From IMG/VR virus record IMGVR_UViG_3300045125_000168, positions 172,431-236,430 of that record: DNA of 64,000 nt; one strand, given 5' to 3'. The notes under the pieces are model-generated. The model worked only from the letters and a program-made list of their open reading frames with translations. It did no database searches and was not told where the DNA came from. Positions within the stretch are counted from its first letter, which is position 1. Each line of letters opens with the position of its first letter. Positions 3,166 through 60,066 of this stretch are shown here, piece after piece. A program made the position numbers and the translations under genes.

Positions 3166-3647
3166 TTAGAGTTCGTTGCGCAGAAGGGATTGAAGCTCGT
3201 GCGTGTGTTCCTGCTCTTTGGCCAGGATGTTTTCTAATTCTATTTTAAGGGGGAGTCTTCGCCAAGCTGCGAAATGATCTTCCCGTATAAGGCAACAGCC
3301 TCTTGCTCAAACTTGAGTTGCAACCGAATCAGGTCTTCAATCTTAGACCCCTTCGGAAGCTCGGGAATGATGTGGCGCTTGACCGTAGGTCGTTCACCCA
3401 TTCCGACGATGTAGCGTTGCAGGAGAGAAATATGCGAGGCTTCTTCTCCGGCATTTTCCTCGAAATCCGCAGCAATCGCTGGGCTACAAAGACCGAGGAG
3501 CGATTCTTTATAGGCGTAGTAAAGATCCCACTGCCTAAATTCGCCCATCAAGGCTTCTTGCAAAAGTCCAAGAACCCCCACGTCCTGAGCCGATAAGAGA
3601 TCGGCAGGAGTAGCGGCTAAGACATATAATTTGCGCAAGAAAGACAT
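3166..3647 (-). CDS. Ferritin-like (bacterioferritin/Dps-type) diiron protein
   Basis: ALMGE...Y, EEASHISLL, LKFEQEAVALY and, after a homopolymer indel near 3245, LENILAKEQEH: paired ExxH helices. Confidence 0.8.
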
Positions 3648-3682
3648 AAGCTCTACCTTTATCAATATAAATCTTGCCCGAC

Positions 3683-3958
3683 TTATTTTTTCAAACTGCT
3701 GAGATACAACCACTTCGCAAGAGCCGTGCGAATCTGTTTTTTGACGACCGCGAACTGCTCGGCGTTCTGAGCTTTTTCCAACTCTGTTTTAACTTTGTTC
3801 TCAATGCGAGATAAGTGACCAGCAAAGTCACTGCGCATTTTGTCTAAATCTTGGTTGACCACTTTCCACGCCTCTTCACCCAAAAACTCTTTGGTCGCGG
3901 GCGATAAGGTCGAACCAAGCGCCTTTTTGCGGTTGACTTTTTTCAAGAATGAAACCAT
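3683..3958 (-). CDS. Small helical hypothetical protein
   Basis: MVSFLKKVNRKKALG..., an open frame between the ferritin-like gene and rmlC. Confidence 0.55.
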   Translation of the reverse strand: MVSFLKKVNRKKALGSTLSPATKEFLGEEAWKVVNQDLDKMRSDFAGHLSRIENKVKTELEKAQNAEQFAVVKKQIRTALAKWLYLSSLKK

Positions 3959-3987
3959 ACGGTGCCCCCTTCGCAAATCGATCAAAG

Positions 3988-4515
3988 CTAAATCTTGATG
4001 AGAGGCCAACTCTGATCGCGGGGATTGACTAAGAGAGGAGTCTCAGGCCATTCGATACCAAGCGCAGGGTCATCCCACCGGAGACCGTCTTCGGCACTTT
4101 TTTCATAAGGGTAATCGACTTTGTACTGAACGATCGCCGTTTCAGACAGAACTAGAAAGCCGTGGGCCAAACCTTTGGGGACATAAAGACTCCAGTGGTT
4201 GTCCTCATTAAGATGAAACCCAGCCCATTTCAGATAGCTCGGGGAGTCAGGTCGAAGGTCCACAATCACGTCATAGATGGAACCCGCAACACACCGCACG
4301 AGTTTCGCCTGAGCCGATCCACCTTTTTGAAAGTGCAAGCCTCGCAAGGTGCCTTTCATGCTTTTGGACTGATTGTCTTGAATCCATCTCTCGTGGATGC
4401 CTGCGGAGCGGAAGTCTGACAGATTGTACGGGACCAAAAAATGTCCTCGGTCATCCGAAAAAACATCAGGCTTAAAGATGCAGGCTTGATAGACAGAAGT
4501 TGTCAACTTTTCCAC
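3988..4515 (-). CDS. rmlC: dTDP-4-dehydrorhamnose 3,5-epimerase
   Basis: DDRGHF, QDNQSKS..GTLRGLHFQ, QAKLVRCVAGSIYDVIVDLRPDSP, VPKGLAHGF, YKVDYPY, WDDPALGIEWP. Confidence 0.95.
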   Translation of the reverse strand: MEKLTTSVYQACIFKPDVFSDDRGHFLVPYNLSDFRSAGIHERWIQDNQSKSMKGTLRGLHFQKGGSAQAKLVRCVAGSIYDVIVDLRPDSPSYLKWAGFHLNEDNHWSLYVPKGLAHGFLVLSETAIVQYKVDYPYEKSAEDGLRWDDPALGIEWPETPLLVNPRDQSWPLIKI

Positions 4516-5396
4516 AAGCGACCCTTTTCTTGGAGTTCCTCTAAGTGTTCGACTAACCTAATCTTCCAATCGACGATATGCTGCGGAGCTAGGGCTTGTG
4601 CCTTGGTGGTGTCCAGGGCCGAGAAGGTCGGACGCAAGGCGCGGGCGCGGTGCTCATCACTACTTAAAAACGGCTTGACTTTCAGATCGATATTCACCAC
4701 GGCACTGAGATAGGACGCAATCACCTGAGCCTGATCGCAGCGCGAGGGCACCGTCGTCGCAGAACCCGAAACATGGATTAGACCCCGAAGCCGAGCGTCA
4801 CTGAGCGCCTGGACAATAAAGCCTGCGACATCCTGAGCGTGAGTTGGAAAGCCAAATTGATCGGATACCACGGGTATAGAGTTTGAGTTCTTTAAATTGC
4901 GGACAATCGCTTCCGGGAACGACGCCCGTGCTCGACCGTACACCCAACTGGTGCGCACCAAAAGAAAAGGTTTTAAACAGTGCCTGAGAAATAGCTCTTC
5001 CCCGAGTAATTTGGTCAGACCATAGACCTGAATCGGCCCCGCTTGGTCGTCCTCACGGTAAGGGATGTGGTGCTCTTTGCCACCAAAGATATAGTCCGTC
5101 GAGATATGCACCACGAGCTTACAGGCTTGAAGCTCCGAACAGACCTTGGCTACCCGTTCGGCAAGAGCCGCGTTGAGTAGGAAGGCTTGGTGCAAATGCT
5201 GCTCGGCCTGATCGACGTTGGTGTAGGCCGCAGCATTGATGACCACTTCAGGGTTCACCGACCGCAGATAGAACTCCAGGGCCTCTAGGTTCGAGAGGTC
5301 ACACTCCTGTCTCGTGGGGGCTAAGACAGGGTAGCCGTGCAAAAGTCGCCTAAGCTCCGTGCCGATCAGCCCTGAGCCACCCAGAATCACGATCAT
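4503..5396 (-). CDS. rmlD: dTDP-4-dehydrorhamnose reductase
   Basis: ILGGSGLIG, VINAAAYTNVDQAE, HISTDYIFGG, YGLTKLLGE (YxxxK), VRTSWVYG, DQFGFPT, RPTFSALD. Confidence 0.95.
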   Translation of the reverse strand: MIVILGGSGLIGTELRRLLHGYPVLAPTRQECDLSNLEALEFYLRSVNPEVVINAAAYTNVDQAEQHLHQAFLLNAALAERVAKVCSELQACKLVVHISTDYIFGGKEHHIPYREDDQAGPIQVYGLTKLLGEELFLRHCLKPFLLVRTSWVYGRARASFPEAIVRNLKNSNSIPVVSDQFGFPTHAQDVAGFIVQALSDARLRGLIHVSGSATTVPSRCDQAQVIASYLSAVVNIDLKVKPFLSSDEHRARALRPTFSALDTTKAQALAPQHIVDWKIRLVEHLEELQEKGRLWKS

Positions 5397-5417
5397 GTCG
5401 AACCTCGCTTGGATTGC

Positions 5418-5550: not shown

Positions 5551-6041
5551 ATGCAGACCTTCCTGAAACGTGTTGCTGATAGATATAGTGTCGTGGCTGA
5601 GATTGGCTCGGGCAAACACGCCCTGACAACCGACGAGAGCGGGAAGTTTTGGGGGAACGCAGGTGCAGGGGGAGTGTTTTGGGCTAAGGAGACGGGCCGT
5701 ATCCTTCTAGCGTACCGCAGCGCCTTGGTGAATGAGCCGCACACTTGGGGTGTGTGGGGTGGGGCCGTGGACAAGGGCGAATCGCCAGAAGATACCGTGA
5801 GACGAGAAATCAAAGAAGAGACCAAGTACGCTGGGGCCTATCAACTCAAGCCGCTCTACGTCTACCAAAACGGCAACTTTCGTTATCACAATTTTCTTAT
5901 TACCGTGCCAAAAGAGTTTGACCCGATCCTCTGCTGGGAAACCGAAGACTTTGGATGGTTTGACTTAGGGGCTTTCCTAAGCCGCTGCACTTCGGTCTCA
6001 AAGCTCTTTTGCCGCACTTAGAAAAAGAAATCAAAAGGTGA
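5551..6041 (+). CDS. NUDIX hydrolase
   Basis: Nudix box GGAVDKGESPEDTVRREIKEET; the last ~20 codons need a frameshift (FPKPLHFGLKALLPHLEKEIKR*). Confidence 0.9.
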
Positions 6042-6046: not shown

Positions 6047-6637
6047 ATGTTGTACAGCTTCCTTGAACAGGTATCGGCAAAGTACGCCGTGATTGCTGAA
6101 CCCACCCTGACCCTGTGGCATGGTGGTAACCTGGAGTTTTCCTCGGAAAGCATCTCACATCGGGGTGGTAGATGGGAGCACGGTCCTGGCCTTTATCTCA
6201 CCACGCACTATGATACAGCAAAAAAATATGCCAAAGGGTCTCGCAAGCTCTATCAAGTTGTCGTTCGGGAGGGAAAAGATCTTTCCGACGTGAACTTACC
6301 GATCGATGCTGTTCATGCTTTTATAGATGAGTATTTTATTCGAGCGCGTAAGCGAGACTTGTTAGCGCGAATCGAAAAGCATGTGGTGAATAACAAAATC
6401 AACGCCGAGACTTTTTTGAATATTACGATCAATGAAAATGGCATCAGAAACACGGATACCGATCGGTTGAGAAATTTTTTAGTCCAGCAAGGAGCCGACT
6501 ATCTGGTTGTGGATAACCCTTTTGGTTGGGGCGAAAGAATGCTTGTGCTTTTCAACATGAAAAACATGGTTAGTAAGAAAAGAATAACGCCAAAAGACAC
6601 TATTGAAGTGTTTGATCTGCCGAAAGAGTTTGCCTAA
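6047..6637 (+). CDS. ADP-ribosyltransferase-fold protein (H-Y clade-like)
   Basis: LWHGG...HGPGLYLTTHYDTAKKYA...LYQV matches the HG / G.G.Y.T / A..YA signature of ART-fold phage proteins. Confidence 0.65.
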   Translation: MLYSFLEQVSAKYAVIAEPTLTLWHGGNLEFSSESISHRGGRWEHGPGLYLTTHYDTAKKYAKGSRKLYQVVVREGKDLSDVNLPIDAVHAFIDEYFIRARKRDLLARIEKHVVNNKINAETFLNITINENGIRNTDTDRLRNFLVQQGADYLVVDNPFGWGERMLVLFNMKNMVSKKRITPKDTIEVFDLPKEFA

Positions 6638-6665: not shown

Positions 6666-8521
6666 TTAGTCCTCTGCGGCCTCGGGTTTTACCAGGATCT
6701 TCTTGATCTCGTCGGCGGCTTCGTTGATAAAATCCTCGTCATCAACGTCGATAGCGTAAAGTGTCCGCTCTTCATCTTCGTCCTCGACTTTATAAACGTA
6801 CTTGATAACCCAACCATTACCGTCATGTTCAGGTTCGATGATCTCCGTGATGTTATCCTGCTCAATTTTTTCTTTGATATTGTCCTCTAGCTCGGACTCT
6901 AGTTGACCTTTTAAAAGATCGCGGACGGTTTCGTTTAACTTATCTTCGTCGATAACTAGAGCGAGACCAGCATCAACCTCAAAGTAAACATAGCCACTTC
7001 TCACAGATCCGCGTGATAGGTGTCTATTCACTTTATCTTGTTGCTCTTCCGAGAGGCTTTCCCACTCTTCTGCAAGGTCTTCTGGTAACTCCGTTTCTGT
7101 TTCACCTTGATGGTAATAGGCGAGAGCATAGTTTGGTGGATAGGACTCTTCATAAGTTTCAACCTGACAGCACTTAAAGAGACTTTCTTTTCTAACACAT
7201 CCAAGACGTATCGGACTTTATCTTCGACATCGCTATCCACTTTATCTAAAATTTGCCTTTCAGCTAGATCGTTAAAACTCTCTTCCAATATATATTCATA
7301 CTCTCCGAGCCAGTCTTCACTAGAATAGTGTTCTTCTTCTCCTTCAATATATTCATCAATTCTCTGAGCCAAATCCTCCAGATCAACCCCTGATGGAGCC
7401 AATTCAGGACGTTTTTCGATCAGCTTATCTTTTAAACCCTCGTCTAAGTCTGAGATCCTAAAATTGTTTTGAGCCGCGTACCCGCCCCCTTTGAGCTTGG
7501 TGATTTTGTCATCCTCTAAGAGCTTGACGATATAAGGATGCAGGTTCTCTTTGGGCTTCTGGTTGCTAAACCCCTTCATTTCGCCAAGAGAGCCATCGGA
7601 GTTCCAAATAAAGGTCGCGTGGGGCTTCCACATTTTTTTGCCTTTTTTGGTCGTAATCGGCTCGCGCAAAGAGAGGATTCTTTGTCCCTTCCTGGCTGAA
7701 GGCACGTTGCCGCAGTGACGCATGGCGGCTCCCTCTTTCTCACACCCAGCACGGTCCAAAAGATGCCACTGCCAACCATCTTCAAACTTAAGGAAGGTCT
7801 TGTCGGCCCCTTGCTCAACCAAGCGGGCTTTTTCTTTTTGCAAAGACTCTGACTTTTCCGTGAGACTTTTAAGGTCTTCAAGCAGCTTATCGGACTTTTG
7901 GTCCTTAAATGTATAATTCAGAACAGGCTGATAATTATTGACCTCAGCGTTGCCAAGATAGTGGGTGATGTCAGTGAGCAGTTGGTCGATGTCTGAGGAC
8001 TTTAAGGGATCTGGTGGCTCTTTACCTTGAAAGGCGGGCCGAGTGCCCCGTGCCTTCTTTAAGAACCACACGATCCGATCCTCTCTTTTGAGATTCTTGA
8101 TCGACTTAGCAATAAGAGCATCCCAATACTCCGGTTGGTCCAACCGATTGGAACCTGGATTCTCGTAGAACGGTTTCAGCATCATCTTCAGCCGTGGCTT
8201 GCGACTAGCTAGGACTTCAATTCTTTGCAAAAACTCAAGTTCATTTGGATTTTCCTTTTTTGCAGCTTGCGGCTTGAGTAGAAGAGGTTCAATTTGCTTC
8301 TTCACGTCTCGAAGGAACTTTTTGTCATCTAACGGGATTTCAAAAAGGACTTTTTCTGCACCATCAACTTTGTAGTTGAGTTGCCAGGATTCTACATAGT
8401 CTTCATTTTCTCGCTCATTCGGACCGTAAATTTTACTTATCTTCTCCGATTTAATTTTCTTTTTGATCGTGGGCATCTCATCTGCATCGGCATCTCCTGG
8501 CAACTTTTGGGATTCATTCAT
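6666..8521 (-). CDS. PcfJ-like domain protein with an acidic C-terminus (ORFs 7028-8569 and 6666-7031 joined)
   Basis: EKEGAAMRHCGNV...ILSLR...PHATF...GEMKGFSNQKP. A frame change near 7190 gives continuous ...QDKVNRHLSRGSV into the downstream ORF. Confidence 0.65.
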
Positions 8522-8525: not shown

Positions 8526-8945
8526 TTACTTTGGAAGCCTAACCATCTCAGCGGACCCCCGCAAAACAAACCCGTGGCGTCCGTAGAATTTCTTGAGCCT
8601 GCCTAGTGGAGTGCTCCCTTGGCGTCGTGGTCCCACACCGACATGAAGCTGCAAGACCACTTGGTACTTGTCAGCAAGCTCCGTCAGGTATCGGAGAGCC
8701 TCAGTCCCCGCACCTGAGCCTTTCTCAGCGGCACTGAGCCAGGAGATATAGACCGTGGGCTTGGTCCTCTCCTTCGTCTCAAGATCTAAAAAGGCACCGC
8801 CCTTGGAGGTCTGCAAAGCGTACCCCAGACCTCGGAAGTAACCCTTGGCCTTGGTTTTGAACTCGTCTACCAGCTTTTGCGCTGGGGCATCCTCGGCACA
8901 TAACACGGGATATTTGCGCTGCACGGAAGAAAAAACATGCCGCAT
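8526..8945 (-). CDS. GNAT-family acetyltransferase-like protein
   Basis: Motif A-like EKGSGAGTEALRYLTELAD and motif B-like RLKKFYGRHGFV. Confidence 0.75.
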   Translation of the reverse strand: MRHVFSSVQRKYPVLCAEDAPAQKLVDEFKTKAKGYFRGLGYALQTSKGGAFLDLETKERTKPTVYISWLSAAEKGSGAGTEALRYLTELADKYQVVLQLHVGVGPRRQGSTPLGRLKKFYGRHGFVLRGSAEMVRLPK

Positions 8946-9278: not shown

Positions 9279-9752
9279 TTATTTTACCTTAAAACCTTCA
9301 CCCATCATCTCTTCTTTGAGAATTTCAAGCATATTGTCAGCAGCATAGTCGATCTCCGGGTTCACAATACCGTCTGCGTTTTTCTTTTCACCCGTTTCGA
9401 TATTGGTCGTAAGATCACCCACCCGCGTAATTTTTATACCTCGGGCCGAACCGTCCTCACACTTATAGGTGATCGAAACGGTGAAAACCTTGTCGTTCAC
9501 CTTTTTCAGTTTCGCATCGACCTTGCACTCGACACCCGCATCCTGAAAAACTTTGGTCACGTCTTTGGCAAACGTATCCAACTTTTTGTCCGAAAACGTC
9601 ATGCCGTGGGCAAAGGTGCTAAAAAGTCCTGTTCCGACGAGAACAGTGACCGTTTTTTTCAACTTATTCAAAAAGTCAAATTTGGCTTCAATCCTAGAAC
9701 AATAGGAATAGGAGATTTTTTTGGCTTGGACTTTTTGAATATAACTGGCCAC
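9279..9752 (-). CDS. Hypothetical protein
   Basis: 157-aa ORF beginning MASYIQKVQAKK; no family recognised. Confidence 0.55.
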   Translation of the reverse strand: MASYIQKVQAKKISYSYCSRIEAKFDFLNKLKKTVTVLVGTGLFSTFAHGMTFSDKKLDTFAKDVTKVFQDAGVECKVDAKLKKVNDKVFTVSITYKCEDGSARGIKITRVGDLTTNIETGEKKNADGIVNPEIDYAADNMLEILKEEMMGEGFKVK

Positions 9753-9779: not shown

Positions 9780-10514
9780 TTATCTGGAGCCGATTTTTTC
9801 CGCAATCTCAAAGAAGTTAGAACCATCCTTTTTCAGTAAAGGTATCTTGCTACGATCAATCCGCCACATCTGTGATGGCATCAGGATGCCTTCATGCGCG
9901 ATGTTACCGTACTCATCTATAAGCTCAAGTTTCTGCTTGTCTGAAAGCAAAGGAAGAAGGATCTTTCCTGCTTTTATCCAAGCATCATAACACCCTTGAA
10001 TAACTTCTTCGAGAAGAGTGGCGTTGTATTCTTCAACAGGTTCTACTTCAAGGTAGTCTTCCGCTAAATCTCTGAGCCACTTCCTCTTTTTCTTATCGAA
10101 GGCATCACGCGCAGCTTCACCGATCTGATCCTCGTCAGGATGGATATTCTGTAGTTCTTTACCAGAAATAACAAACATGAATCCATAACGACCGCGTTTC
10201 TTTATCAAATCATATATGTATTCACTGTTAGTTCCTGCTACTGCCGCACCGAGAGCATAATGAAGTGCATAGCCGACATTTTTGCTGATATATACCCTGT
10301 CATCTACTGCTCGGCTAAAACCTTTAGTGCGTGACATATTTGGTTTGATGCCATGCTTCCATATTTTTTGCGCTTTTCTCTCGGTGGTGGTCCCATGGTA
10401 ATAAAAAGCGTTTTTTATTGCGTCATGTGGCAAGGCACTTTCGCAAACATCAACGTCTTCGTTGAGTGAATATTTGGCCAATACTTTTGTGAAAAAGTTC
10501 ACAAAATACTCCAT
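9780..10514 (-). CDS. ADP-ribosyltransferase-fold protein
   Basis: FYYHGTT...IWKHGIKP...RVYIS...YALHYA...PDEDQ, an HGT / VY / A..YA ART-like pattern. Confidence 0.55.
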   Translation of the reverse strand: MEYFVNFFTKVLAKYSLNEDVDVCESALPHDAIKNAFYYHGTTTERKAQKIWKHGIKPNMSRTKGFSRAVDDRVYISKNVGYALHYALGAAVAGTNSEYIYDLIKKRGRYGFMFVISGKELQNIHPDEDQIGEAARDAFDKKKRKWLRDLAEDYLEVEPVEEYNATLLEEVIQGCYDAWIKAGKILLPLLSDKQKLELIDEYGNIAHEGILMPSQMWRIDRSKIPLLKKDGSNFFEIAEKIGSR

Positions 10515-10538: not shown

Positions 10539-11051
10539 CTACTTCGACTTCATGATATAACGAGTCTGCACTGTACCCGGTAAGACTATGACCTCTTTTT
10601 CTTCGAGGACATCCTGCCGCAAAGCACTGTCAATGCCAGAGACTCTCGTTATATCGACAAGTATTAATGATGGAGGAACTATGGCTTCCAGAACAATACC
10701 CTTCGTATGTGACTTAATATATCCACCAGAGTATGGGAAAAAGGCGAAACTCCGGGCTGCGTCTAGATCTTTGGACCAAGATGAAAGCTGGTCCGAGTGC
10801 AAAGAGAAGCTCTCACCTAACTCCAGTTTTTTGCCTGCTAAAGCTCGGATTAGTTTTTCAGGAGTTTTGTAATTACCTACCGAGATACCGCGATATAGCT
10901 TAAGAGAACGCTTGGGACTGGCTTCTTTTAAGCTCTCAATGATGTCAGGAGATGGTGGATCTTTGATATCAGAAATCCATTCTTCCAGCCATTCAATGGC
11001 ATCATACCCCGGCCAAGTTTTTGCGATGATTTGTTTTAAAAAACTTTTCAT
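10539..11051 (-). CDS. R-S-E clade ADP-ribosyltransferase-like protein
   Basis: LYRGI (Arg), SSWSKDLDAARSFA (Ser motif), EEKEVIV (ExE). Confidence 0.7.
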   Translation of the reverse strand: MKSFLKQIIAKTWPGYDAIEWLEEWISDIKDPPSPDIIESLKEASPKRSLKLYRGISVGNYKTPEKLIRALAGKKLELGESFSLHSDQLSSWSKDLDAARSFAFFPYSGGYIKSHTKGIVLEAIVPPSLILVDITRVSGIDSALRQDVLEEKEVIVLPGTVQTRYIMKSK

Positions 11052-11057: not shown

Positions 11058-11862
11058 CTAAACCTCAAAAATACCAGAGTTGATGCGATTCCGCAGAAAC
11101 GTCGGCTGGGCTTTCAACGGAACTCGTCTCAAAAAGTCTACACCGGAACATAAACTATAAGACAATATTCCGTCGTGAATAGATCCAGGAGGATACTTCA
11201 CAGGCTTGTTGCCGTTGCTGATTTGTCCGGTGATAGAGTTGATGAAGCTGGAAACCCAGGCTCCCATGGAGTATCCGCGACGTTGCCCGCGCTCGATCTT
11301 GTTTGCTAGTGTGGGATCTTTTGTCGGCAATAACCGAGGAGCACATAGATCTTCCACACGTCCCAACCTGGAACCTTGCGCAAGGTTGCGTCGAAGTGAA
11401 TGCCTTTGGCCTTGGTGAAGTCGCGGTTATCGTGATCGGCAAAAGTCGGTTTACCACTGAATGTTTGGTAAATAAATTTTCCGAAGCGTGGGTCAAAGTA
11501 CGAAATCTCAGAATATGGAAAACAGTGCAAGTTGCGATTGGGGTACTCTACTGTTACGATCGGAACTTCTGTAAACAAGTAATCGTTTATATTTGCACTG
11601 ATCTGATAGGTTTCACTCGCGCCCTTGAGCCAAGAATAGTCGATGGCATGACCGTTGACTTTAGCTACACACTTCTTGGTATCTTTGTCTTCGATCTTAC
11701 GGAGGCGTTCCTTGGCGACTTCTTTTTTTGAGGAAACTCTTGAGGTGCGGCATCAGCGTAAACCTTAAACCGTCCTTCGTGATGACGGGGTAGGCTTAGA
11801 TGCGCGTGTGTGGGAAACCGCATACTTTGGTCCTTTTTTAGACTTCTAAAAGGTCGGAGCAC
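11058..11862 (-). CDS. Prohead (capsid maturation) protease, assemblin-like; frameshifted
   Basis: Three fragments join as ...PNRN...F...TFSGKPTFADHDN..AKGIHFDA...VLLG..DPTLANKIERG..GYSMG, the His and Ser-Met-Gly layout of large-phage head proteases. Confidence 0.75.
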
Positions 11863-16199: not shown

Positions 16200-17215
16200 T
16201 CATGAGGACAAGCAGTAGGTCAGAAGACCTCTAGCGACTGCCCCAAAAGGATCTTTGGCCATTCTTATTTCAGTGACCTTGAAGGGGAGGGGAGTTTTCT
16301 TTTTGAAACGATTGAGTTCTTCTTCCCAAAGGTCGCGGAAACCTTTGAGGCTTGCTGTTCCCCCGGAGAGAATGATCGGAATGGCGTCTGGAAAATCTAG
16401 TTGAGATTTCATCTTGGCCCACTGGGTCACAAGATGTTTGATCTCATAGCGGATCATTTCTTTGTAGTGGAAGAAAAGGGCTGGACCCATCTCGTCATCA
16501 AGCGCATCTGGTTTCATGAGATCAAACTCAGGGTTTTCTTTGAGCTTGAGAATCCGAGCGATGGACGTTCCCACAGAAGCCGCACTATGTTGGTCAATCC
16601 AGTCACCAGACCGAGCTACCGAGAACTCAATCGAAGCGATCAACTTATAGCTTGCCGCCACGTTGACCTGTCCTGCTCCGTGAGAGATAGCAATCCCGCA
16701 GTGGTCTTCGTTCGCGCACTCCGCGTAGACAATGGCCAAGGCTTCGTTCACAGGCTCGGGAACGTAACCCAGGTCTTCGAGGAGGTTGCTAAAAAACCCA
16801 GTGTGCCAGACGTTGTTGGCCTTAGGGTTATCAAGTGGCACTGCTGGGATGGAGAACGCACATTTTTCTTCCCCAAACTCACGGGGTTCACCCAGGAGAG
16901 TTTTTACGAGAGTCGAGATGATGGCTCTACCGTCTTTTCTTCAGGGTTCAGAACCCCAGAAGCCATGGGACGTCGGACTTCTTTGTTCAAGACGCGGGCG
17001 ATGCTGATGGCTTCGTCACCGACGATGTATGCTTTGTTATTGAGCATCACCGCATTAAGAGAACCAGCCGCGAGGCGAGACCTTTGCTCTTCGTCGATTT
17101 CCACAAAAGCGTTGCGAAGTCTTTTCACTTCGACCTCGTTTTTGCCTTCAACGCGAGCAACTAACAGGTTTGATGTTCCCACATCCAAACCAGCACCGAG
17201 GGTGACTTTTGACAT
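16200..17215 (-). CDS. Actin-superfamily ATPase, volactin-like; one frameshift near 16900
   Basis: Phosphate-1 GLDVGTSNL, connect-1 PVNEALA, phosphate-2 GIAISHGAGQVNV, adenosine IILSGGTA, C-terminal DPFGAVARGL. The join reads LNPEEK-DGRAIISTLVKTLLGEP...FSIPAVPLD. Confidence 0.85.
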
Positions 17216-27773: not shown

Positions 27774-28243
27774 ATGCTTTTTTTCAACCAAAAAGTCAAA
27801 AGTAAGTATGTCTTAGTTATGGCAGAGTCTGGATCAGAAAAAGAGCAAAATCTGATTAAGGCTCTTAATGCTGTAGCCAAAGAAGCGAAGTTGCACGATC
27901 CAAAGTTCGCTTATTGGGAATGTAACAATTTTTCGAGAGCGGCTCATCGAGCAGCTAAAGAGATGGGTGTAAGTTCTGAAGTATGGTCTTGTGAATTAAA
28001 ATACGAGCGTGGTCTTGGAGAGATCGAGGCTGGAGAGAAGGTGGGTCATACCTTTTGAAAATCGGACATAAGTTCTACGACTACACGGGAAGGCAAGCGA
28101 CTCCCAAAATACCTCCAGCATATGTGGCAGATACGCCCCACAAACTTCATGAAGGTGCGCATAAAGATCCCAATCAAGACTATTACGATCGGGATGGTAG
28201 CGACTTTTGGTACGAAAAAATAACTCAAAAAATGGCTATATGA
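27774..28243 (+). CDS. Papain/transglutaminase-fold protein with a Cys-His-Asp pattern; two fragments
   Basis: WECNNFSRA...GHTF...YDYTGRQ. Confidence 0.5.
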
Positions 28244-28271: not shown

Positions 28272-29434
28272 ATGGGCGGTTTTTTCAAACAGGTGATCGC
28301 TAAATATACTCTTGTGACCTCGGACTTCAAAACGGTCGAGAAAAAGTTTCTTGACCTCGGTGCTGAGAAAGCCAAGGTCAAAGACTATCTCGACCGTTTT
28401 AAGAAATTAAGGGACAGAAATAAGCTCAAAGATGACGAAAAGAACATCGACCTTTGGGGCTCTAAGCCTTTTCAAGAGTTTCAAGAAAGAATTGAAGAGT
28501 TAGAAAAGGCTAAAACCAGGACCGAAAAGAAAAAGGGCAAAGTTGATTTGAGAGAAAACATCCCAGGAGCAAAATTAATTACTGAGAACGAAGAGTGGAC
28601 GGTGTTTGAGATCACGACTAATGAAGCATCCCATAAATTAGGGCAAGGTACGGAGTGGTGTATCAAGCACGATAAAAGTGAACAATGGGATCACTATGAC
28701 AGAAGTAATACGATTTACTTTTTTATTTCAAAGACGAGAGACCAGAAAGACCCCTGGTCTAAACTAGCCCTTCTTATTGACCTTCAAGGAAAGAAAACCT
28801 ACTGGGACCGTCGTAATAAGGCTCATAAAAGGGTGCCAACAGACTTAAAATTACCGAGGTTTAAAGTTATAATTCCAAAGTTTAAGTGGAAGGCCGATAG
28901 TAGCGGAGATATTGATGTATCTGAGGAAGGTCTCACCTCTCTTGAGGGAGCCCCTCAGACGGTCGATAGGAATTTTAATTGCAGAGACAACAAACTCACC
29001 TCTCTTGAGGGAGCGCCTCAAACGGTTGGTAAGGATTTTTATTGCAGCAGCAACCGACTTACCTCTCTGGAAGGAGCGCCTCAAAAAGTTGGTGGTTTTT
29101 TTATATGCAATAGCAACCGACTCACCTCTCTTGAGGGATCGCCTCAAGAGGTTGGTGGGTGCTTTGATTGCAGTGACAACAAACTAACCTCTCTTGCGGG
29201 AGCGCCTCAAAAGGTTGATGGGTATTTTAGTTGCCGCGGCAACCAACTCATATCTCTTGAGGGAGCGCCAAGAGAGGTTGTTGCGAGTTTTGATTGCAGT
29301 AACAACCAACTCACCTCCCTTGAGGGAGCGCCTCAAACGGTTGGTGGGAATTTTTTTGCACCAGAAACGGAAAAAAATTCACTGAGGAAGAAGTCCGTGC
29401 GGTCAGCAAAGTCGGCGGCAAAGTCTATGTTTAG
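28272..29434 (+). CDS. GTxWC-domain plus leucine-rich-repeat protein
   Basis: ASHKLGQGTEWCI...IYFF...K domain followed by 7 LRRs; the true end KFTEEEVRAVSKVGGKVYV* needs an indel in the T-run near 29350. Confidence 0.75.
28932..29360 (+). repeat. Seven tandem 63-bp coding repeats (21-aa LRR, LTSLEGAPQxVggxFxCxxNx)
   Basis: CTCACCTCTCTTGAGGGAGCGCCTCA recurs with a 63-bp period. Confidence 0.9.
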
Positions 29435-29921
29435 CCTCAGGATATGGCTTACTCAAGCGAGATCTTATTTTATCAATAGGTTCATCGATAAAACCCATGC
29501 TTTAACGTCTTCATCTCTTAAGCGTGGTCAGTTCCATGAACTCGACACGCGTATCCTTCACTGCCTTTTCGATTCGCTAGTAGACTACATTGAAAAAGAA
29601 CTCGCTTGGATGCATGTGATTTGCACAGAGGCAAACCCAAAGCGACGTGGTTTTGGTTGGCGTTCGCGTCACGAGGGACTTGCTCATTTGGACTGGGAAA
29701 GTGAGTTGATGGATGACCATGGCCAACCGACCAGTCAGGCTCTTTCAGCGAGAGAGATCAAGGCACTTTATTTGTGGTGGACGGAAGAAAGACCTAAGCG
29801 TCAAGACCCTTTCATGGTCAGTTCTATGGAAAGATTTTTCGCACTTGAGAGACAATTCACTAACGAAGATGGTGAAATGCTCATAAGGTTAATGAAAATA
29901 AGATCTAACCTTTGGACCTAA
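29427..29921 (+). CDS. Conserved phage hypothetical protein, falsely fused to the LRR gene in the ORF track
   Basis: RILHCLFDSLVDYIE...GLAHLDWE...EIKALYLWWT...EMLIRLMKIRSNLWT; sequence style is unrelated to the LRR. Confidence 0.6.
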   Translation: MFSLRIWLTQARSYFINRFIDKTHALTSSSLKRGQFHELDTRILHCLFDSLVDYIEKELAWMHVICTEANPKRRGFGWRSRHEGLAHLDWESELMDDHGQPTSQALSAREIKALYLWWTEERPKRQDPFMVSSMERFFALERQFTNEDGEMLIRLMKIRSNLWT

Positions 29922-30078: not shown

Positions 30079-30545
30079 ATGTTTTTGAAAAGGCTTGCGA
30101 TGAAAATCATCGCTATGGATTTTGGAGCGTATCTCGACCCACTCACGAAGCATAGCCTTATCAATGCACCCCTTTGTCCGACTATGTAAAAAATTTAACG
30201 CCCGATCAATTTGCCAAAGACTCGTATGCCGAAAAGGTATCGAGATATCCTAAAAATAAGAAAACCAAGCATAAGGGAGACTCGTACATTATATACGAGG
30301 CGGGCCAAAGAGATCCCATGGACCCTTTTTCCAAGAAAAGTTTTGACCGACTGGTGGAAGAGACGGAAGGGCCGACAGAAAACTCTTTAGTGTCAACCTT
30401 GAGCTTCTTGAGCCCGTGGATAATCCATCCGAGCCTAGTGGTGAGAATCCATCGTATCCGCAAGCGGCTTTGTGGTGGCAAAAGGGTCTCTCTTAAGGAA
30501 TCGAACTTGACAGATGACAACTTAGCTTGTTCAATTAAAAATTGA
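30079..30545 (+). CDS. Hypothetical protein; frameshifted
   Basis: MFLKRLAMKIIAMDF... joins ORF 30174-30545. Confidence 0.45.
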
Positions 30546-46400: not shown

Positions 46401-46604
46401 ACAATTCTCTGGGCGACTCTCGTGTGGGAACCTTGATGCTTTCTACCGATGGTACAAGCACCTCGATTTCTGAGCACGTTTGCTGAGACCGCACCGATGG
46501 GCGTGACCTGGGCCGCAACGATGGCTGAAAATGACGTCCAGGTGCTCTATACGACCAACTCGTCGTCCAAAATCCTGAGTGCTAAAATCAAGCTTTTTGC
46601 CTAA
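43439..46604 (+). CDS. Fibre-like virion protein, paralog 5 (two variable inserts); many fragments
   Basis: MASKKLLKHGVPVRFG...; inserts about 43670-44130 and 44820-45370; ends LSAKIKLFA*. Confidence 0.75.
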
Positions 46605-52053: not shown

Positions 52054-52586
52054 GTGGGTGTTTTTCTTACAGGAGCAAAACCTTTAGACCAATTTAAGTG
52101 CGACCTTTGCGGTCAAATTTTCGTGAAGGCCGCAATTCATGAACACCATTTGGTCAAAAGGGCGTCGGGCGGGCAGGATACCTTAGACAACATTGCTCGC
52201 CTTGATGCCTACTGCCATCATGCTTTGCATCAGGTGGAGTCGGCTCTCAAACACCCTAAGAAAGGCATCACGGCATCCGATCTAGCCTCTGGCCTTTATC
52301 CAAATAACCAAATGGCCCAGAGAAAAGTTTTGGAACTCGCAGCCGTTGCTGCGCACTAGGCCGAGACCCAACGGAGAACGTCGCAAGTTCTTATGACACG
52401 GATGATCTCGTGTCTTTGCCCGTGGTCAAAGTGCATCCAAAAATCCGTAAGCAAGTAAAGATTGTGGCTAAAGAACTTAAGAATCCCAAAACAGGACGCG
52501 CCATAGGCGTCAGTGGTTATTTGGAAATGCTTTTACTCTCCGATCTTAAAAAACGTGGCTTTGATATTCGTGTCGAAAAAGATTGA
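52054..52586 (+). CDS. HNH endonuclease-like protein; frameshifted
   Basis: CDLCG...HEHHLVKRASGGQDTLDNIARLDAYCHHALH. Confidence 0.75.
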
Positions 52587-54232: not shown

Positions 54233-54900
54233 ATGGCAAATTCAGCTTAAAAGTTGCGTCAAGCGAGTCAGACTAGATCGGTACGTACATTGCCGATTGC
54301 CGAGCTTATCACCCAGCACGGAGAGTTCTTCAGCACTGTATCAACCTTTGTGAATTTCGCCAAGTGCTAAACTTCTCTGACGCACTTCGACGCCAGAACC
54401 GCAAGATCCGTTTGTCGTGTCAATCCCACCAATCGACTCTGCATCGAAGAATACTCACACTTTATGGTGCAAGACGTCTAGCCGACTATGTAAGCACAGA
54501 GTTTGTTCTCGTCGCGCAAGCCGATGGTTTTATCATGAACCCTTGGGCCTGGACTGATGAGTTTCTATGATTATGACTACATCGGTGCTCCCTGGCACGT
54601 TCATCAACTGCAAACCAGGCGCACGACCCCGTCGCACCTTAGTTGGCAACGGAGGGTTCTCCCTGCGAAGCAAAAGACTGTGCGATTTTCTCCGTGACGA
54701 TCCCGACCATTCAAGGAGACGCATCCTGAAGATGTCGTGATATGTCAAAAGCAAAGATTCTATTTAGAAGAGCATGGCTTCAAGTTTGCTCCAGTCGAAT
54801 TGGCGTACCGTTTTCTTGTGAAAATTATTTGTGGAACGGAGCTTTCGGTCAACACGCCTACTTCTTATTGCACCCATGCCGCTGAAAAAGACCAAACAGG
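54233..54900 (+). CDS. DUF5672-like (glycosyltransferase-like) protein; many fragments
   Basis: [31 protein letters not shown]...[11 protein letters not shown]...PEDVVIC...GFKFAP.ELA.RF, assembled across frames. Confidence 0.7.
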
Positions 54901-54911
54901 AGAACCAGGAT

Positions 54912-57290
54912 ATGCCGAAAAAAACGGATGAGTTTATTAGACTACCACTTATGCCGCTGCGCGATATCCTCGTGTTTCCAACCACGGTCGTTCCTCTCTT
55001 CGCAGGTCGATCCAAATCGATCAAAGCCCTTGAAGATGCTATGGCAACCGACAAGCAAGTTATGCTTGTCGCGCAGAAAAATTCTAAATTGTCAGATCCT
55101 CAACCAAGTGACCTGCATCTTGTTGGTACGATCTGCAAAATTCTCCAGTTTTTGCGGCTTCCTGATGGTAATGTCAAAGTCCTGGTGGAAGGTGGAGCTA
55201 GAGCCAAAGTCGTAGACTTCCTCGACGAAGGATGATTATTTCCTCGTGGACGTGGAAGAGCTTGAGGAAGAAAAACTTAACGAAGTCGAAAGCGAAGCCA
55301 TTAGCCGCACGGTCAAAATTGCGTTTGATAACTACGTTCGTCTCAATAAGCGCATCCCACCGAAATGCTGCTTTCCATTTCGCAAATCGAAGACGAGTCA
55401 AAATTGGCAGATTCCATTGCCTCGCATTTGACCAACCTAAAATTGGACGATAAGCAGCTTCTCCTTCAACAAACCAACCCTAGTGCGCGTCTTGAAAAAA
55501 TTTACGGCATGGATTCAAAGCCGAAATTGAAATCATGCGCGTTGAGAAAAAATTCGGTCCCGTGTCAAGAGACAGATGGAAAAGGCTCAAAAGAGTATTA
55601 TCTCAATGAGCAAATGAACGCGATTCAGAAAGAACTCGGTGACAAGGACGACTCCGAGAGCCGAGTTCATGGAGCTTGAGCGGCAGATCAAGGCTAAGAA
55701 ACTTAGCGATGAGGCCTGAGAAAAGCTCAACAAAGAACTGAAGAAGATCAAAAACATGCCACCGATGAGCGCAGAAGCACGGTGGTGACGCAACTATATT
55801 GATACCTCTTCTATCCCTCCCTTGGAATGAGTATTCTAAGGAGAAAAAAGATATTGTCTTCGCCGAAGATGTTTTGAACAAGGATCACTTCGGGTCTTGA
55901 AAAGGTCAAAGACCGAATCCTCGAATTACCTCTCGGTTAGGCTCTTGGTCGAAAACCCGAAAGGACCAATCTGTGCCTGCGTCGGACCCCCAGGGGTTGG
56001 TAAAACCTCTTTGGCCAAAAGCATTGCTGAGGCCACGGGTCGCAAGTTTGCTCAGTTGCGCTCGGTGGGTGTGCGGGATGAAGCCGAAATCCGAGGGCAC
56101 CGTCGAACCTATATCGGGTCCATGCCAGGACGCATCATCAACGCCATTAAAAAAGTAGGCACGTCTAACCCAGTCATCCTCCTCGATGAGGTGGACAAAC
56201 TCGCGGCAGATCACCGGGTGACCCCACCGCAGCGATGCTCGAAGTCCTGGACCCGGAGCAAAACTTTGCGCTCGTGGATCTACTACCTTAGCCCTCGACT
56301 ACTGACTTGTCCAAAGTTCTCTTCATGGCAACGGCCAACACCCTCCTCGACCATCTTCGACCCCTGCTGGACCGGATGGAGATCATCCAGCTATCAGGGA
56401 CTACCGAAGAGGAAAAGAGTCGCTAATCGCCAAGCAATACCTCGTCCCGAAACAACTGAAGACCAACGGGTCAAAGAAGGCTCTTGAGCATGAACCCCAA
56501 CGCCATCAAGGAACTGGTCCGGTACTACACGAGAGAGTCTGGTGTTCGGAACTTAGAGCGAGAGATCGGTTCAGTGATTCGCAAAGTTGTTCGCAAAGCT
56601 CTACAAAAGTGCGGTTCTGAGCCCAGTAAGATGGAGTTTGAAGCCGAGACCATCACCGAAAAGGCAGTGCAAAAATATCTTGGTGCAAGACGCTATAACA
56701 TTGGCCTCGCCAATCACCAGCATGGAAATCGGCCTTTGTACGGGCCTCGCATGGACCGAAGTGGGCGGGGACTTGCCCGTCACCGAGGTCACCATGCCCC
56801 TGGTAAAGGCAAGGTCACTTGCACAGGCAAGCTCGGCGAAGTCATGCAGAGTCGGCCAAAGCCGCGTTATCCTATGTGCGCTCCCGCTCTAAGGCGCTAG
56901 ACCTGCCGATGACTTTTATGAGAAAATCGACCTGCATATCCACGTCCCCGCGAAGGCCGTTCCAAGGACGGTCCTTCAGCAGGGATGTTATGGCCACGGC
57001 TCTCACCAGTGCCGTGACCAAGCGGACCTGTGAACCGCGAAGTCGCCATGACAGGCGAAGTCACGCTGCGTGGGCGCAGTACTGCCGATCGGTGGTCTGA
57101 AAGAAGAAGCTCATCGCAGCAGCACCGAGGCGGAATCAAGAAGTCTTGATCCCCAAGGAGAACGAAAAGACCTTGAGGGACGTGCCCAAAAGCGTCCTTA
57201 AAGAAGTCGAAATCGTCTGCGTGGAGACACATGGACGAAGTTCTCCATCACGCCTTGGTATGGGAAGGCTCTGAGCCCAAAATAGGCTAG
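54912..57290 (+). CDS. lon: Lon ATP-dependent protease, full length but heavily frameshifted (assembly error or pseudogene)
   Basis: [13 protein letters not shown], Walker [19 protein letters not shown], Walker [25 protein letters not shown], and PKDGPS / PIGGL remnants across frames. Confidence 0.9.
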
Positions 57291-57388: not shown

Positions 57389-58040
57389 ATGAGCTTTCTC
57401 TCAAACTTGAAGTTCTCGCAGGCGATGTGCTTAAGTTCCGAACCAAGAAAGACCTCGAAGCACTCAGGCGAAAAAAGAAACTCGGTCGTTCATCAAAAAT
57501 TTGAAGAAAGAAAAAGAGAGAGAAACGAGAAGGCTACGATGAACATGCAGCGGACAGTCTCCATAAAATTTCAAAATTGGTAACGTGACGGATCTCGGGC
57601 GTCGTGGTTTTGGCTGTAGGACCGGGAAGATGATTTTTTGGGTATACAGCTTGAGTTTGAAGACGAATTAGAAGAGAAGGATATTAGAGATCGCCCCAAA
57701 AGCCATCAAATTGGCAAAAGAGTACAAACTCCGCTACCCGAAGGAAAGTCGCAATGTTAGAGATTTTGAAGAGAATTTAGTAAAAATCTTGGACGAGGGT
57801 GTCGATACGGTTGATTACTACGAATATCAATTTTATCTCTTGCCTGAAGCTCTTTTTGGCAAAGCGGATATCGGCAGGTCTAGTAATTTACTTAATCCCG
57901 ATGAAAGGGACATTTACGACAAAATGAGAAATGAAATACCTTTTTACGTCATCGCCATTTATTCCGACGATCAAAAGAAATACAAGAAAATCGTCGATGA
58001 AATCCGCAAAGAGTCCGAATCAAGAGTAAGTTATCGTTGA
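57389..58040 (+). CDS. Hypothetical protein; frameshifted fragments probably one gene
   Basis: With one added A the start reads MSFLSNLKVLAGDVLKF; the 3' part is ORF 57711-58040. Confidence 0.4.
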
Positions 58041-58445
58041 CTCAGTGATAAGGGGCAACACCCGACTAGACGTGGCTGAGGATCGCGAAAAACCGTCACT
58101 CTGAGCGTGCAACCATGATGCCGCCTACGAGTTCGGATGAAGATATTTTAGCGAGAGATTTTTCGACGAACTCTCCTGAGTGCTGACGCTAAGATTCGTC
58201 GCTCAACAGAAGCTGAGAGCCATCTATAGTTTCGTGATATAACCAATCAGGCACGTCGTACACGATGCCGTCTTGGTTGTCCTCTAACATTTTTACGATT
58301 TCGTCGTACAATTTTAGCTTGCCGGGAATCACTTGGACGCCCACGGGACTGGAGCGGATGCTCGCCTCTCTTCCACAACTTAACATCGCGCTCAAACCGG
58401 AGTTCGCTCCCGATCGAGATGGCCCAGTTGAAAGGGCCGTCCCAC

Positions 58446-58778
58446 TCAATCGGTAACGCCACGTCCTAACCACTCACTGGCATCTTCCGGTGTACCGACG
58501 CGAGCGGGAGAATAACGCCCAGCAAACTTTTTGTTCAGGACTGAGACGATCTTGTTGGCCGCAGCTACTAACTCAAGGTGTCTGTTTGGAACTTTGTTGT
58601 CCGAGGGCTCTTGGTTCTGACTAAGAACTTGAAGCGCATGGAACCAGTCCCGATACCGCAGTTCCTGCGCCAGAGCTTCCTGAGCGTCCGAGAGCTTCGG
58701 GAACTTATCGCGTTCCTTTTTGTGCTTGAGCTTGGCGAGGGTCTTGAGTTGAGCGATCGAGGAGACGTGCAGAGCCAT
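58446..58778 (-). CDS. Small protein with a 'glyoxalase superfamily protein' N-terminal-like helical domain
   Basis: QLKTLAK.....KLSDAQEALAQELRYRDWFHAL. Confidence 0.5.
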   Translation of the reverse strand: MALHVSSIAQLKTLAKLKHKKERDKFPKLSDAQEALAQELRYRDWFHALQVLSQNQEPSDNKVPNRHLELVAAANKIVSVLNKKFAGRYSPARVGTPEDASEWLGRGVTD

Positions 58779-58966
58779 GAAAGTCCTACCTTTCGTTAGA
58801 CCTTGTGACGCTGGTGTTCGCTGCGCAAGCTCAAGGCCGTGAAAGTTAGACCATTGGCTTATAGAGGCTACGGCTGCTGATTTGCTTCCCCAGTGGCGAA
58901 CCGGACGGGTGCGCGTACCCGATGACATCTAGTCGCGGGTCGTTTAGCAAACTCCAGGTCGCGTTG

Positions 58967-59555
58967 TCAAGCCCATAACTCGGAGTGACAGATGGCGATT
59001 TTTTTGCTTGGAATTTGGGATCGTCGCCCCACCACTGATCTGCCATTTCTAAAAATTCGTCTGGTGTTTGCAGCCTTTGTTTTGTGCGCTTGTTCTGATC
59101 GATCAAATAGACAGGAAGCCCACGGCTGAAAGCATCGTAGATTCGTAGCTCCCAAAAGGAGCGGCCATAGTCGGTTTGTTGGCCGTCTGACACTATACAA
59201 TCGGCTTGAGGCAGAAGAAATTCAAAAAATATCTGCTCGGCCAAGCCTTTCGTGATTGTCTCTGTCTTGTCTCGCCACACCTTGACTTGGGTAATAGCAC
59301 GTTTGCCAAAAACCATTTTTGTTATGAATTGGACCAAGTAAATTACTTTCTCACTCTCTTCATTCAAAGCAACGATCTTATCAGGTAAAGAGTAGAGGTT
59401 GAGTATTCTCGCCAAGCTGCGTTAAGAGCTTCTTTCTCTTGTCGGAGATGAGCTTCACATACATAACCGCATTCATCTGTTTTAGGCTTGTAGCCTTCCC
59501 AAGAGACGTTTTGCGGAGCCGCGAGAATTTTGAGCTTTTCAAGGAACATGTTCAC
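58967..59555 (-). CDS. Hypothetical protein with a possible degenerate GNAT-like fold; fragments joined
   Basis: MFLEKLKILAAPQ... joins ...QVKVWRD...GLAEQIFFEFLL...IVSDGQQTDYGRSFW. Confidence 0.5.
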
Positions 59556-59736
59556 CTCGGATTTTACCTACTCACCCCTAACAGAATCGGCACAAAAAGC
59601 CAATTTCTTTAGGCGAAAAATATCTCAATAAAGTCATATTCTTACCCAAATGCTAGGCGGTGCCGACCCTTTTGGCTTTGAGGTGGCTTTTCGCCTTCCC
59701 ACACGCCAAAAAGTTTCGTTTCGAGCGTCAGGGTTT

Positions 59737-60066
59737 TCATCGTCCGTCCACTTCAAGGTTGGACACCACGCCAAACCCTTCGACTTCACACGTCTCCCCA
59801 TCGTCCTCTTTGTAAGAGAAGTTGCAGCGGATTTGATCGCCTGCTTTTAGCTCGCGCAATTCGTCCCGAAGCTCAGGGTATTCGTCAAGATTCGGAAGCC
59901 TGAGTTTTGTGATCTTATATACCCGTGACGGTGCCCAGGCTGGTTCCTCCCACGAGCCCTCAGTCCCAGGCTCGTCCTCAATCAGGACGCTGCGCACCAC
60001 ATCCGGTCTGTAGTCTGCAAGGTCTACGGTTCGGCTCGCCACACTCAAACGCTTCAAGAAAGACAT
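59737..60066 (-). CDS. Acidic hypothetical protein
   Basis: 109-aa ORF with an RBS (AAGGGGG), starting MSFLKRLSVA. Confidence 0.6.
   Translation of the reverse strand: MSFLKRLSVASRTVDLADYRPDVVRSVLIEDEPGTEGSWEEPAWAPSRVYKITKLRLPNLDEYPELRDELRELKAGDQIRCNFSYKEDDGETCEVEGFGVVSNLEVDGR

What the first reader, a model, noticed from the sequence alone, without database searches (positions are those of the whole stretch)
3166..60066. Shared N-terminal leader on many unrelated proteins: candidate capsid-targeting, protease-cleaved signal for a packaged effector set
Seen in the sequence, long form: NUDIX 5551 MQTFLKRVADRYSVVA-E; ART 6047 MLYSFLEQVSAKYAVIA-E; GNAT 8945 MRHVFSSVQRKYPVLCA-E; ART 10514 MEYFVNFFTKVLAKYSLN-E; ART 11051 MKSFLKQIIAK; papain-like 27774 MLFFNQKVKSKYVLVMA-E; LRR 28272 MGGFFKQVIAKYTLVTS-D. 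Short form: ferritin-like 3647 MSFLRKLYVLA-A; 30079 MFLKRLAMKIIA-M; 57389 MSFLSNLKVLA-G (needs one indel fix); 59555 MFLEKLKILA-A; 60066 MSFLKRLSVA-S. Weaker matches at 3958 and 9752. RmlC, RmlD, RRM, Lon, RuvC and the SSB lack it. Established: T4 internal proteins and Alt carry a short N-terminal capsid-targeting peptide that the head protease removes, and assemblin-type proteases cleave after Ala. Inference: this phage uses a portable leader to load diverse enzymes into heads for injection, with the protease at 11058-11862 cleaving after [VI][VIL]A.
Basis: partly seen in the sequence, partly recalled or inferred. Interest (0 to 1): 0.88.

Follow-up and report, generated by a model that had tools for sequence, protein, structure and literature searches.

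The report
Portable head-targeting leader on phage proteins
A 350-kb uncultivated phage puts the same 10-19-residue N-terminal tag on about a dozen mostly unrelated proteins; the tag is most likely an address label, cut off by the head protease, that loads them into the capsid for injection, as phage T4 does with its internal proteins.

Summary
Twelve ORFs in the window, plus two weak ones, begin with M-x(0-3)-F-[LF]-x-[KRQ]-[VIL]. Six have a long form that continues ..[KR]-Y-x-hydrophobic-hydrophobic-Ala-Glu. Six have a short form that ends hydrophobic-hydrophobic-Ala. Codons vary synonymously, and past residue 20 the proteins show no BLAST similarity.

A profile built only from other metagenomic contigs ranks five window leaders as its top five six-frame hits, all at ORF starts.

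Three cargo families (DUF3990/ART-like, NUDIX, the 10514 family) show the same pattern. Close relatives carry this leader. Distant relatives in T4-like phages carry a T4-type capsid-targeting sequence (hydrophobic-x-Glu at residues 8-10) on the same domain.

The broken gene at 11058-11862 belongs to a prohead-protease family with no Pfam or PDB sequence match. A model of a 59%-identical relative matches only T4 gp21.

Best reading: a distant variant of the T4 capsid-targeting and propeptide system. Packaging and cleavage are inferred. The cut site is unresolved; Ala/Ser is more conserved than the following Glu.

This is a new variant of a known kind, of moderately high interest.

The parts
5551..6021 (+). 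NUDIX hydrolase with a long leader (5551-5601, MQTFLKRVADRYSVVAE)
   Evidence: Translation. Pfam NUDIX, E 5.7e-13. Best hit of the relatives-only leader HMM, 16.9 bits. Homologues carry lineage-specific leaders.
6047..6637 (+). DUF3990/ART-PolyVal-like protein with a long leader (6047-6100, MLYSFLEQVSAKYAVIAE)
   Evidence: Translation. Pfam hits are below threshold. 256 homologues, nearly all with a 12-28 aa extension before the conserved WHGG strand. In the AF2 model the leader is a helix at 5-12 plus an extended stretch at 13-19, and the domain starts at residue 20.
8526..8945 (-). 139-aa protein of unknown function with a long leader (8892-8945, MRHVFSSVQRKYPVLCAE)
Evidence: Translation. 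No Pfam hit. It hits part of a 3925-position PHROG family of unknown function.
9780..10514 (-). 244-aa protein with a long leader (10458-10514, MEYFVNFFTKVLAKYSLNE)
   Evidence: Translation. HMM hit, 7.8 bits. 34 homologues carry KY-type, T4-like or no leader. Distant profile match to the 6047 family, E 3.9e-5.
10539..11051 (-). 170-aa protein of unknown function with a short leader (11022-11051, MKSFLKQIIA)
   Evidence: Translation. No family hit. Lies directly downstream of the protease.
27774..28058 (+). ORF with a long leader (27774-27827, MLFFNQKVKSKYVLVMAE), probably continued in 28055-28243
   Evidence: Translation. HMM hit, 11.5 bits. No family hit. 'Papain-like' is not confirmed.
28272..29921 (+). 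549-aa protein with a long leader (28272-28325, MGGFFKQVIAKYTLVTSD)
   Evidence: Translation. HMM hit, 7.2 bits. LRR_4 is below threshold. PHROG families of unknown function.
3240..3647 (-). Ferritin-like protein with a short leader (3615-3647, MSFLRKLYVLA)
   Evidence: Translation. Pfam Ferritin, E 4.9e-7. Its homologue on L004 carries the long form instead.
30079..30189 (+). Short ORF with a short leader (MFLKRLAMKIIA), probably the 5' end of the gene in 30174-30545 after a frame change
   Evidence: Rank 8 of the short-form HMM.
57389..57583 (+). ORF starting MSFLSNLK, then out of register
   Evidence: Rank 2 of the short-form HMM.
59364..59549 (-). 61-aa ORF with a short leader (MFLEKLKILA)
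   Evidence: The Met is at 59549, not 59555.
59737..60066 (-). 109-aa ORF with a short leader (MSFLKRLSVA)
   Evidence: Best hit of the short-form HMM.
3683..3958 (-). Probable leader protein (MVSFLKKVNRKKA), weaker
   Evidence: Rank 8 and rank 6.
9279..9752 (-). Doubtful leader (GTG start, ..SYIQKVQAKK..)
   Evidence: Not among the best HMM hits at its start.
11058..11862 (-). Prohead (head maturation) protease, read in three frames in this assembly
   Evidence: The pieces hit phrog_18299 at E 1e-20, jumbo-phage head proteases at 40-45% identity, and 351 proteins in 1.84 billion. Invariant His and Ser. A model of a 59%-identical relative matches only T4 gp21, 5JBL, E 1e-4. Its true N-terminus lacks the leader.

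Best explanation
The leader is a capsid-targeting propeptide.

Its first part, M-x-x-F-L-x-K-hydrophobic, is predicted to form a short amphipathic helix. This part would bind the assembling prohead core. Any protein carrying it is therefore built into the head.

The extended tail of the leader ends in hydrophobic-hydrophobic-Ala, often followed by Glu. Here the phage's gp21-fold prohead protease (11058-11862) would cut, most likely right after the Ala/Ser. The cut frees the mature enzyme inside the capsid, and it then enters the host with the DNA.

Shown:
- a shared, translated, cargo-independent and lineage-specific N-terminal module;
- a prohead protease of T4 gp21 fold encoded next to several of these genes;
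- the same cargo domains sitting behind canonical T4-type targeting sequences in T4-like phages.

Inferred: binding to the core, cleavage and its exact site, and injection.
For: 1. Twelve to fourteen ORFs share the leader. Outside the first 20 residues they are not similar to each other.

2. Leader profiles built only from other contigs recover the window's leaders at ORF starts. The reverse search finds Met-anchored ORF-start hits mainly in clade relatives L004, L005 and L009, and not in four control loci.

3. Related contigs carry the leader on other neighbours: 8 genes on L004, 5 on L005, and 1 beside the protease on L009. One of these is a genuine ART-PolyVal protein.

4. Three cargo families each show the same domain behind different leaders, according to lineage. 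In T4-like contigs (T4 neck protein, gp32, gp13) the extension is about 10 residues and ends hydrophobic-x-Glu. Fifteen of the 38 genes on L007 share it. This matches the published T4 capsid-targeting sequence and the gp21 motif L/I-x-E (PMC9026906, PMC3012670).

5. On a tree of the cargo domain alone, leader class changes 4 times, against 19.4 (minimum 14) for shuffled labels.

6. The protease family has invariant His and Ser, and its only structural match is T4 gp21.

7. A hydrophobic(3)-Ala-small motif is the only conserved feature of the protease's own N-terminal 60 residues; Ala is present in 24 of 40. It resembles the end of the leader.

8. In the AF2 model the leader is a low-confidence helix plus a linker, detached from the domain.

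9. ART and NUDIX domains are documented or predicted virion-delivered cargo elsewhere (PMC5512222). PHROG families fuse NUDIX to portal or protease.
Against: - There are no virion, proteomic or expression data, because the phage is known only from a metagenome contig.
- The protease gene is out of frame twice in this assembly.
- No major capsid, portal or scaffold protein with a mapped propeptide was available to calibrate the cleavage motif.
- gp21 relatives with known specificity (T4, phiKZ, SPN3US) all cut after Glu (PMC9026906, PMC10052503). The window's short leaders have no conserved Glu.
- The Ala motif in the protease N-terminus is modelled as a beta strand and may be structural only.
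- Distant jumbo phages with the same protease family show no such leader within 24 kb of the protease.
- A degenerate DNA pattern found no other genome in IMG/VR.
Confidence: 0.58

Rival explanations
1. The targeting role is the same, but the protease follows the T4 rule and cuts after Glu in hydrophobic-x-Glu (VAE, IAE, CAE, MAE, LNE). The short leaders are then cut elsewhere or not at all.
For: All six long leaders in the window end in hydrophobic-x-Glu/Asp. The protease's only structural match is gp21. Every characterised gp21 relative cuts after Glu (PMC9026906, PMC10052503).
Against: In homologues of the same clade the Glu is replaced by Asn, Ser, Ala, Gly, Asp or Gln, while the preceding Ala/Ser stays. 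The six short leaders and the protease N-terminal motif lack Glu.
Confidence: 0.2
2. The leader is an amphipathic N-terminal helix for some other destination, not the capsid. Candidates are membrane binding, a phage-built compartment, or a degradation tag read by the phage-encoded Lon protease.
For: The mean helical hydrophobic moment is 0.58, against 0.40 +/- 0.15 for other N-termini. A Lon gene lies in the window.
Against: This does not explain why the same cargo domains carry canonical T4 capsid-targeting sequences in T4-like phages. It also does not explain the clustering beside the prohead protease, or the conserved small-residue end of the leader.
Confidence: 0.12
3. The shared 5' ends are a by-product of gene-cassette recombination or of selection on translation initiation, and the peptide has no function.
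For: The leader genes sit in variable regions whose gene order differs between relatives.
Against: Codons vary synonymously while the residues are kept. The motif persists across contigs whose cargo is only 50-70% identical. Leader class follows phylogeny.
Confidence: 0.05

Closest known systems
T4 capsid-targeting sequence on internal proteins IPI-III and Alt, removed by the gp21 prohead protease
   Same: A short (10-19 aa) N-terminal propeptide is the only thing shared by otherwise diverse proteins. A gp21-fold protease is encoded nearby. The cargo includes ADP-ribosyltransferase-like enzymes. Homologous cargo in T4-like phages carries the T4-type sequence (PMC9026906, PMC3012670).
   Different: The leader sequence is different and comes in two lengths. 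It ends in hydrophobic-hydrophobic-Ala(-Glu) rather than L/I-x-Glu at residues 8-10. The protease has no detectable sequence similarity to Pfam or PDB entries. The set is larger: at least 12 in 64 kb.
Propeptides of phiKZ, 201phi2-1 and SPN3US head and ejection proteins, cut by gp175/gp245 at A-x-E
   Same: A giant phage in which many internal proteins lose N-terminal propeptides to a diverged gp21 homologue (PMC10052503).
   Different: Most of those propeptides are 111-254 residues long, and the pages read do not describe them as one shared portable sequence. Their motif has Ala at P3 and Glu at P1.
Polyvalent proteins and solo effector domains of phages (Iyer et al. 2017)
   Same: The same kinds of domain (ART, NUDIX, GNAT, peptidases) are predicted to travel in the capsid (PMC5512222).
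   Different: There the domains are fused into one giant polypeptide or to portal/MuF. Here each domain is a separate gene with its own leader.
Herpesvirus assemblin maturation sites (from my own knowledge; not checked here)
   Same: A hydrophobic residue at P3, Ala at P1 and a small residue at P1', with the same protease fold class as gp21.
   Different: Those sites lie at the C-terminal end of the scaffold, not on N-terminal cargo tags. Foldseek did not return assemblins.

Membership tests
T4-type capsid-targeting sequence / internal-protein system | A short N-terminal peptide shared by proteins that are otherwise unrelated | tested here: met
   One caveat: 6047 and 10514 are distant relatives.
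T4-type capsid-targeting sequence / internal-protein system | The phage encodes a gp21-family prohead protease | tested here: inconclusive
   Fold level only. A model of a 59%-identical relative matches 5JBL (E 1e-4, TM 0.6-0.65 on the target). There is no Pfam Peptidase_S77 hit and no PDB sequence hit. The window copy is frameshifted.
T4-type capsid-targeting sequence / internal-protein system | The leader ends in the gp21 motif L/I-x-Glu at about residues 8-10 | tested here: not met
   The window's long leaders end hydrophobic-x-Glu at residues 15-19, and the short leaders have no Glu. Homologues in T4-like contigs do meet this feature.
T4-type capsid-targeting sequence / internal-protein system | The leader is sufficient for packaging, is removed in the head, and the cargo is injected | not testable with these tools
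   Needs virions or reconstituted procapsids.
phiKZ/SPN3US-type propeptide processing | Cleavage motif Ala/Ser/Gly-x-Glu | tested here: not met
   In the window, P3 relative to Glu is Val/Ile/Cys/Met/Leu, not Ala. A few homologues have Ala-Gly-Glu or Ala-Ser-Glu.
ADP-ribosyltransferase (ART-PolyVal / DUF3990) for the 6047 protein | Significant match to the family model or fold | tested here: inconclusive
   DUF3990 scores 23.9 bits (cut-off 32.2) and ART-PolyVal 20.4 bits (cut-off 31.2). Several homologues carry a precomputed PF13151 hit.

The most novel reading that the evidence does not exclude
A clade of huge uncultivated phages uses a capsid-import code that has not been described. Its gp21-fold protease family, invisible to sequence searches, has moved its P1 preference from Glu to Ala/Ser. 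The address peptide has been swapped between lineages on the same cargo domains. If so, the whole injected proteome of such phages could be read from sequence alone, by scanning for the leader that matches each lineage.
Probability: 0.4. Interest if true: 0.75.

Novelty: new variant of a known kind. Interest (0 to 1): 0.62.

Why it matters
Proteins that a phage injects with its DNA are its first weapons against host defences, yet outside T4 and a few giant phages they can be found only by virion proteomics of cultured isolates. A sequence tag that marks them would allow the injected set to be predicted for uncultivated huge phages. Here that set includes a NUDIX hydrolase, ART-like proteins, a ferritin-like protein and many unknowns.

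The parallel leader classes on the same cargo domains suggest that tag and head machinery co-evolve. This is a testable rule for phage engineering, where proteins are to be loaded into capsids. It also bears on how prohead proteases change specificity.

Tried and rejected
- **Stop-codon recoding as the cause of the broken genes.** No single reassignment restores the genes. The breaks look like assembly indels, and the same breaks are present in the 351-kb JGI contig.
- **A leader on the protease itself** ('MPHLKSFLKK' at 11753). Rejected. Relatives show that the true N-terminus is in another frame and has no leader.
- **A DNA-level motif** (promoter or translation signal). Rejected, because the codons vary.
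- **Close relatives among isolated phages.** None were found by megablast, or by tblastn with the 6047 protein. Only the connector gave a hit, at 22% identity, to Pseudomonas phage PaBG.
- **A degenerate leader pattern scanned against IMG/VR.** Of 18 hits, all but the window's own contig were out-of-frame or internal chance matches.
- **Leaders near the protease in distant jumbo phages** (Rhizobium RHph_I42, Yersinia fHe-Yen9-02). None found.
- **The 497-aa protein at 7031-8521 as the major capsid protein.** Its sequence is charged and it has no family hit, so I did not pursue it.
- **Function of the 10514 and 11051 proteins.** No Pfam or PDB hit.
- **Crude all-against-all N-terminus similarity test.** Only weakly positive, because paralogous tail-fibre genes inflate the control.


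Full report
**What the window is.** The window is the last 64 kb of IMG/VR contig UViG_3300045125_000168 (236 kb). That contig is part of a 351,605-bp JGI metagenome contig. The window uses the standard genetic code and has no close relative among isolated phages. Its head-tail connector is 22% identical to that of the jumbo Pseudomonas phage PaBG. Several genes are read in more than one frame: the protease, Lon, 27774/28055, 30079/30174 and 57389. The same breaks are in the JGI contig, so they are probably assembly errors.

The Met of the '59555' ORF is at 59549. The 30079 ORF is on the + strand. The 57389 ORF loses register after eight codons.

I count six long leaders: 5551, 6047, 8945, 10514, 27774 and 28272. 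They have the form M-x(1-4)-F-[LF]-x-x-V-x-x-[KR]-Y-x(1-2)-hydrophobic-hydrophobic-Ala/Ser-Glu/Asp. I count six short leaders: 3647, 11051, 30079, 57389, 59549 and 60066. They have the form M-(x)-(S)-F-L-x-[KRN]-[LI]-x(0-3)-hydrophobic-Ala. Two more are weak: 3958 and 9752.

Codons for the conserved residues differ between genes, and most of the start codons are preceded by a Shine-Dalgarno-like purine run, some of them weak (none at 10514), as read by eye. The peptide is therefore what is conserved, and it is translated. With the first 20 residues removed, the proteins do not hit each other. The one exception is that the 6047 and 10514 families are distant relatives at profile level.

**It is not chance.**
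- A core regex hits 29 times in six frames. Eleven hits lie within five residues of a Met, where 1.8 are expected. That regex was written after seeing the data.
- I therefore built profiles only from sequences outside the window. The long-form profile gives five window leaders as its five best of 782 hits, each at the start of a long ORF. Only 84 of 1476 six-frame Met are such starts.
- The short-form profile ranks 60066, 57389 and 3647 first.
- Profiles built from the window find Met-anchored ORF starts in related contigs L004, L005 and L009, but not in four control loci.
- A crude all-against-all N-terminus comparison was only marginal.

**Relatives.**
- The 6047 protein has 256 homologues. 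Nearly all are about 195 aa long, with a 12-28-residue extension before an invariant W-H-G-G strand.
- On the contigs of two close homologues, unrelated neighbours carry the same leader. There are eight on L004, including a ferritin-like protein that has the long form where the window's ferritin has the short form. There are five on L005, including a protein that passes the Pfam ART-PolyVal threshold.
- On L009, a leader gene sits back to back with the protease.

**The key comparison.** In more distant homologues, the same domain is preceded by a different peptide of about ten residues that ends hydrophobic-x-Glu. Two such contigs are T4-like: one has the T4 neck protein and a large terminase, the other has gp32 and gp13. 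On one of them, 15 of the 38 genes in 20 kb begin this way.

This is the published T4 capsid-targeting sequence. It is 10-19 residues long, with residues 4 and 7 needed for targeting, residues 8 and 10 needed for processing, and the gp21 motif L/I-x-E. It is described as the only thing that the diverse T-even internal proteins share (PMC9026906, PMC3012670).

The NUDIX family and the 10514 family repeat the pattern. Each has the window-type leader in near relatives, a second Ala-ending type ('..AL-x-K-V-I-A') in others, the T4 type in distant ones, and a few members that start exactly at the domain. On a tree built from the cargo domain alone, leader class changes 4 times, against 19.4 (minimum 14) for shuffled labels. 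The N-terminal peptide is thus a module tied to the phage lineage, not to the cargo.

**The protease.** The pieces of 11058-11862 match PHROG 18299, 'head maturation protease'. They also match proteases of Erwinia, Yersinia, Rhizobium and Xanthomonas jumbo phages and 351 proteins in an exhaustive search. The family has no Pfam or PDB sequence match, but it has invariant His and Ser. An AlphaFold model of a 59%-identical relative (pLDDT 86.6) has a single significant structural match, T4 gp21. The protease itself has no leader; an apparent one at 11753 is out of frame.

**Where the cut might be.** The window's long leaders fit the T4 rule of hydrophobic-x-Glu. Across homologues, however, the Glu is often Asn, Ser, Ala, Gly, Asp or Gln, while the preceding Ala/Ser is kept. 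The short leaders have no Glu. The only conserved feature in the first 60 residues of the protease family is a hydrophobic(3)-Ala-small motif, which may be an autoprocessing site. All gp21 relatives with mapped sites cut after Glu (PMC9026906, PMC10052503). In the model of the 6047 protein, the leader is a helix (residues 5-12, lower confidence) followed by an extended stretch, and the domain begins at residue 20.

**Cargo.** NUDIX and ferritin-like are solid. The 6047 family is DUF3990/ART-like below threshold. The other cargo proteins have no assignable function. ART, NUDIX and GNAT domains are known or predicted capsid-delivered effectors (PMC5512222), and PHROG families fuse NUDIX to portal or protease.

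**Verdict.** The finding is a real, portable, lineage-specific N-terminal module. It is best explained as a distant variant of the T4 capsid-targeting propeptide system. Packaging and cleavage remain untested.

Noticed in passing
window 32185-46473 (+): At least five tail-fibre-like genes (32185, 34485/34619, 37450, 40413, 43370) share a different N-terminal module (..LLKH-x-VP-[LV]-RFG..NG-[MV]-IYY-[DN]-T..). They hit head-decoration and tail-fibre PHROGs. This looks like a paralogous fibre family with a common attachment domain.
   Followed up: partly
window 7031-8521 (-), residues 96-106 (8204-8236): A 497-aa charged protein between leader genes has an internal leader-like stretch (EFLQRIEVLAS). 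It may mark the end of a long propeptide or a fused gene.
   Followed up: no
L009:4587-5726 and P0122, P0125, P0127, P0129 and others: Several homologues of the prohead protease are 380-1180 aa long. One has Hint/intein Pfam hits, so inteins appear to be inserted in prohead protease genes of this family.
   Followed up: partly
L029:2627-2734 (-), about 1.2 kb upstream of the window start: Another ORF starts with a long-type leader (MASLTQLLEKVAERYAVLG), so the set extends beyond the window.
   Followed up: no
window 54831-56900 (+): A Lon protease gene (substrate-binding and AAA domains) is split over several frames. This phage-encoded Lon gene is broken in the assembly.
   Followed up: partly
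window 3988-5396 (-), 1580-1888 (-): dTDP-rhamnose pathway genes RmlC and RmlD, and an RRM-domain protein, are encoded by the phage among the leader genes.
   Followed up: partly
window 16200-16841 (-): The precomputed Pfam annotation of the JGI contig gives 'Volactin' (PF25216) for this 213-aa ORF. The surrounding 16.2-17.6 kb region is fragmented on both strands.
   Followed up: no
window 52054-52359 (+): An HNH endonuclease gene. No tRNA genes were found anywhere in the 64 kb.
   Followed up: no
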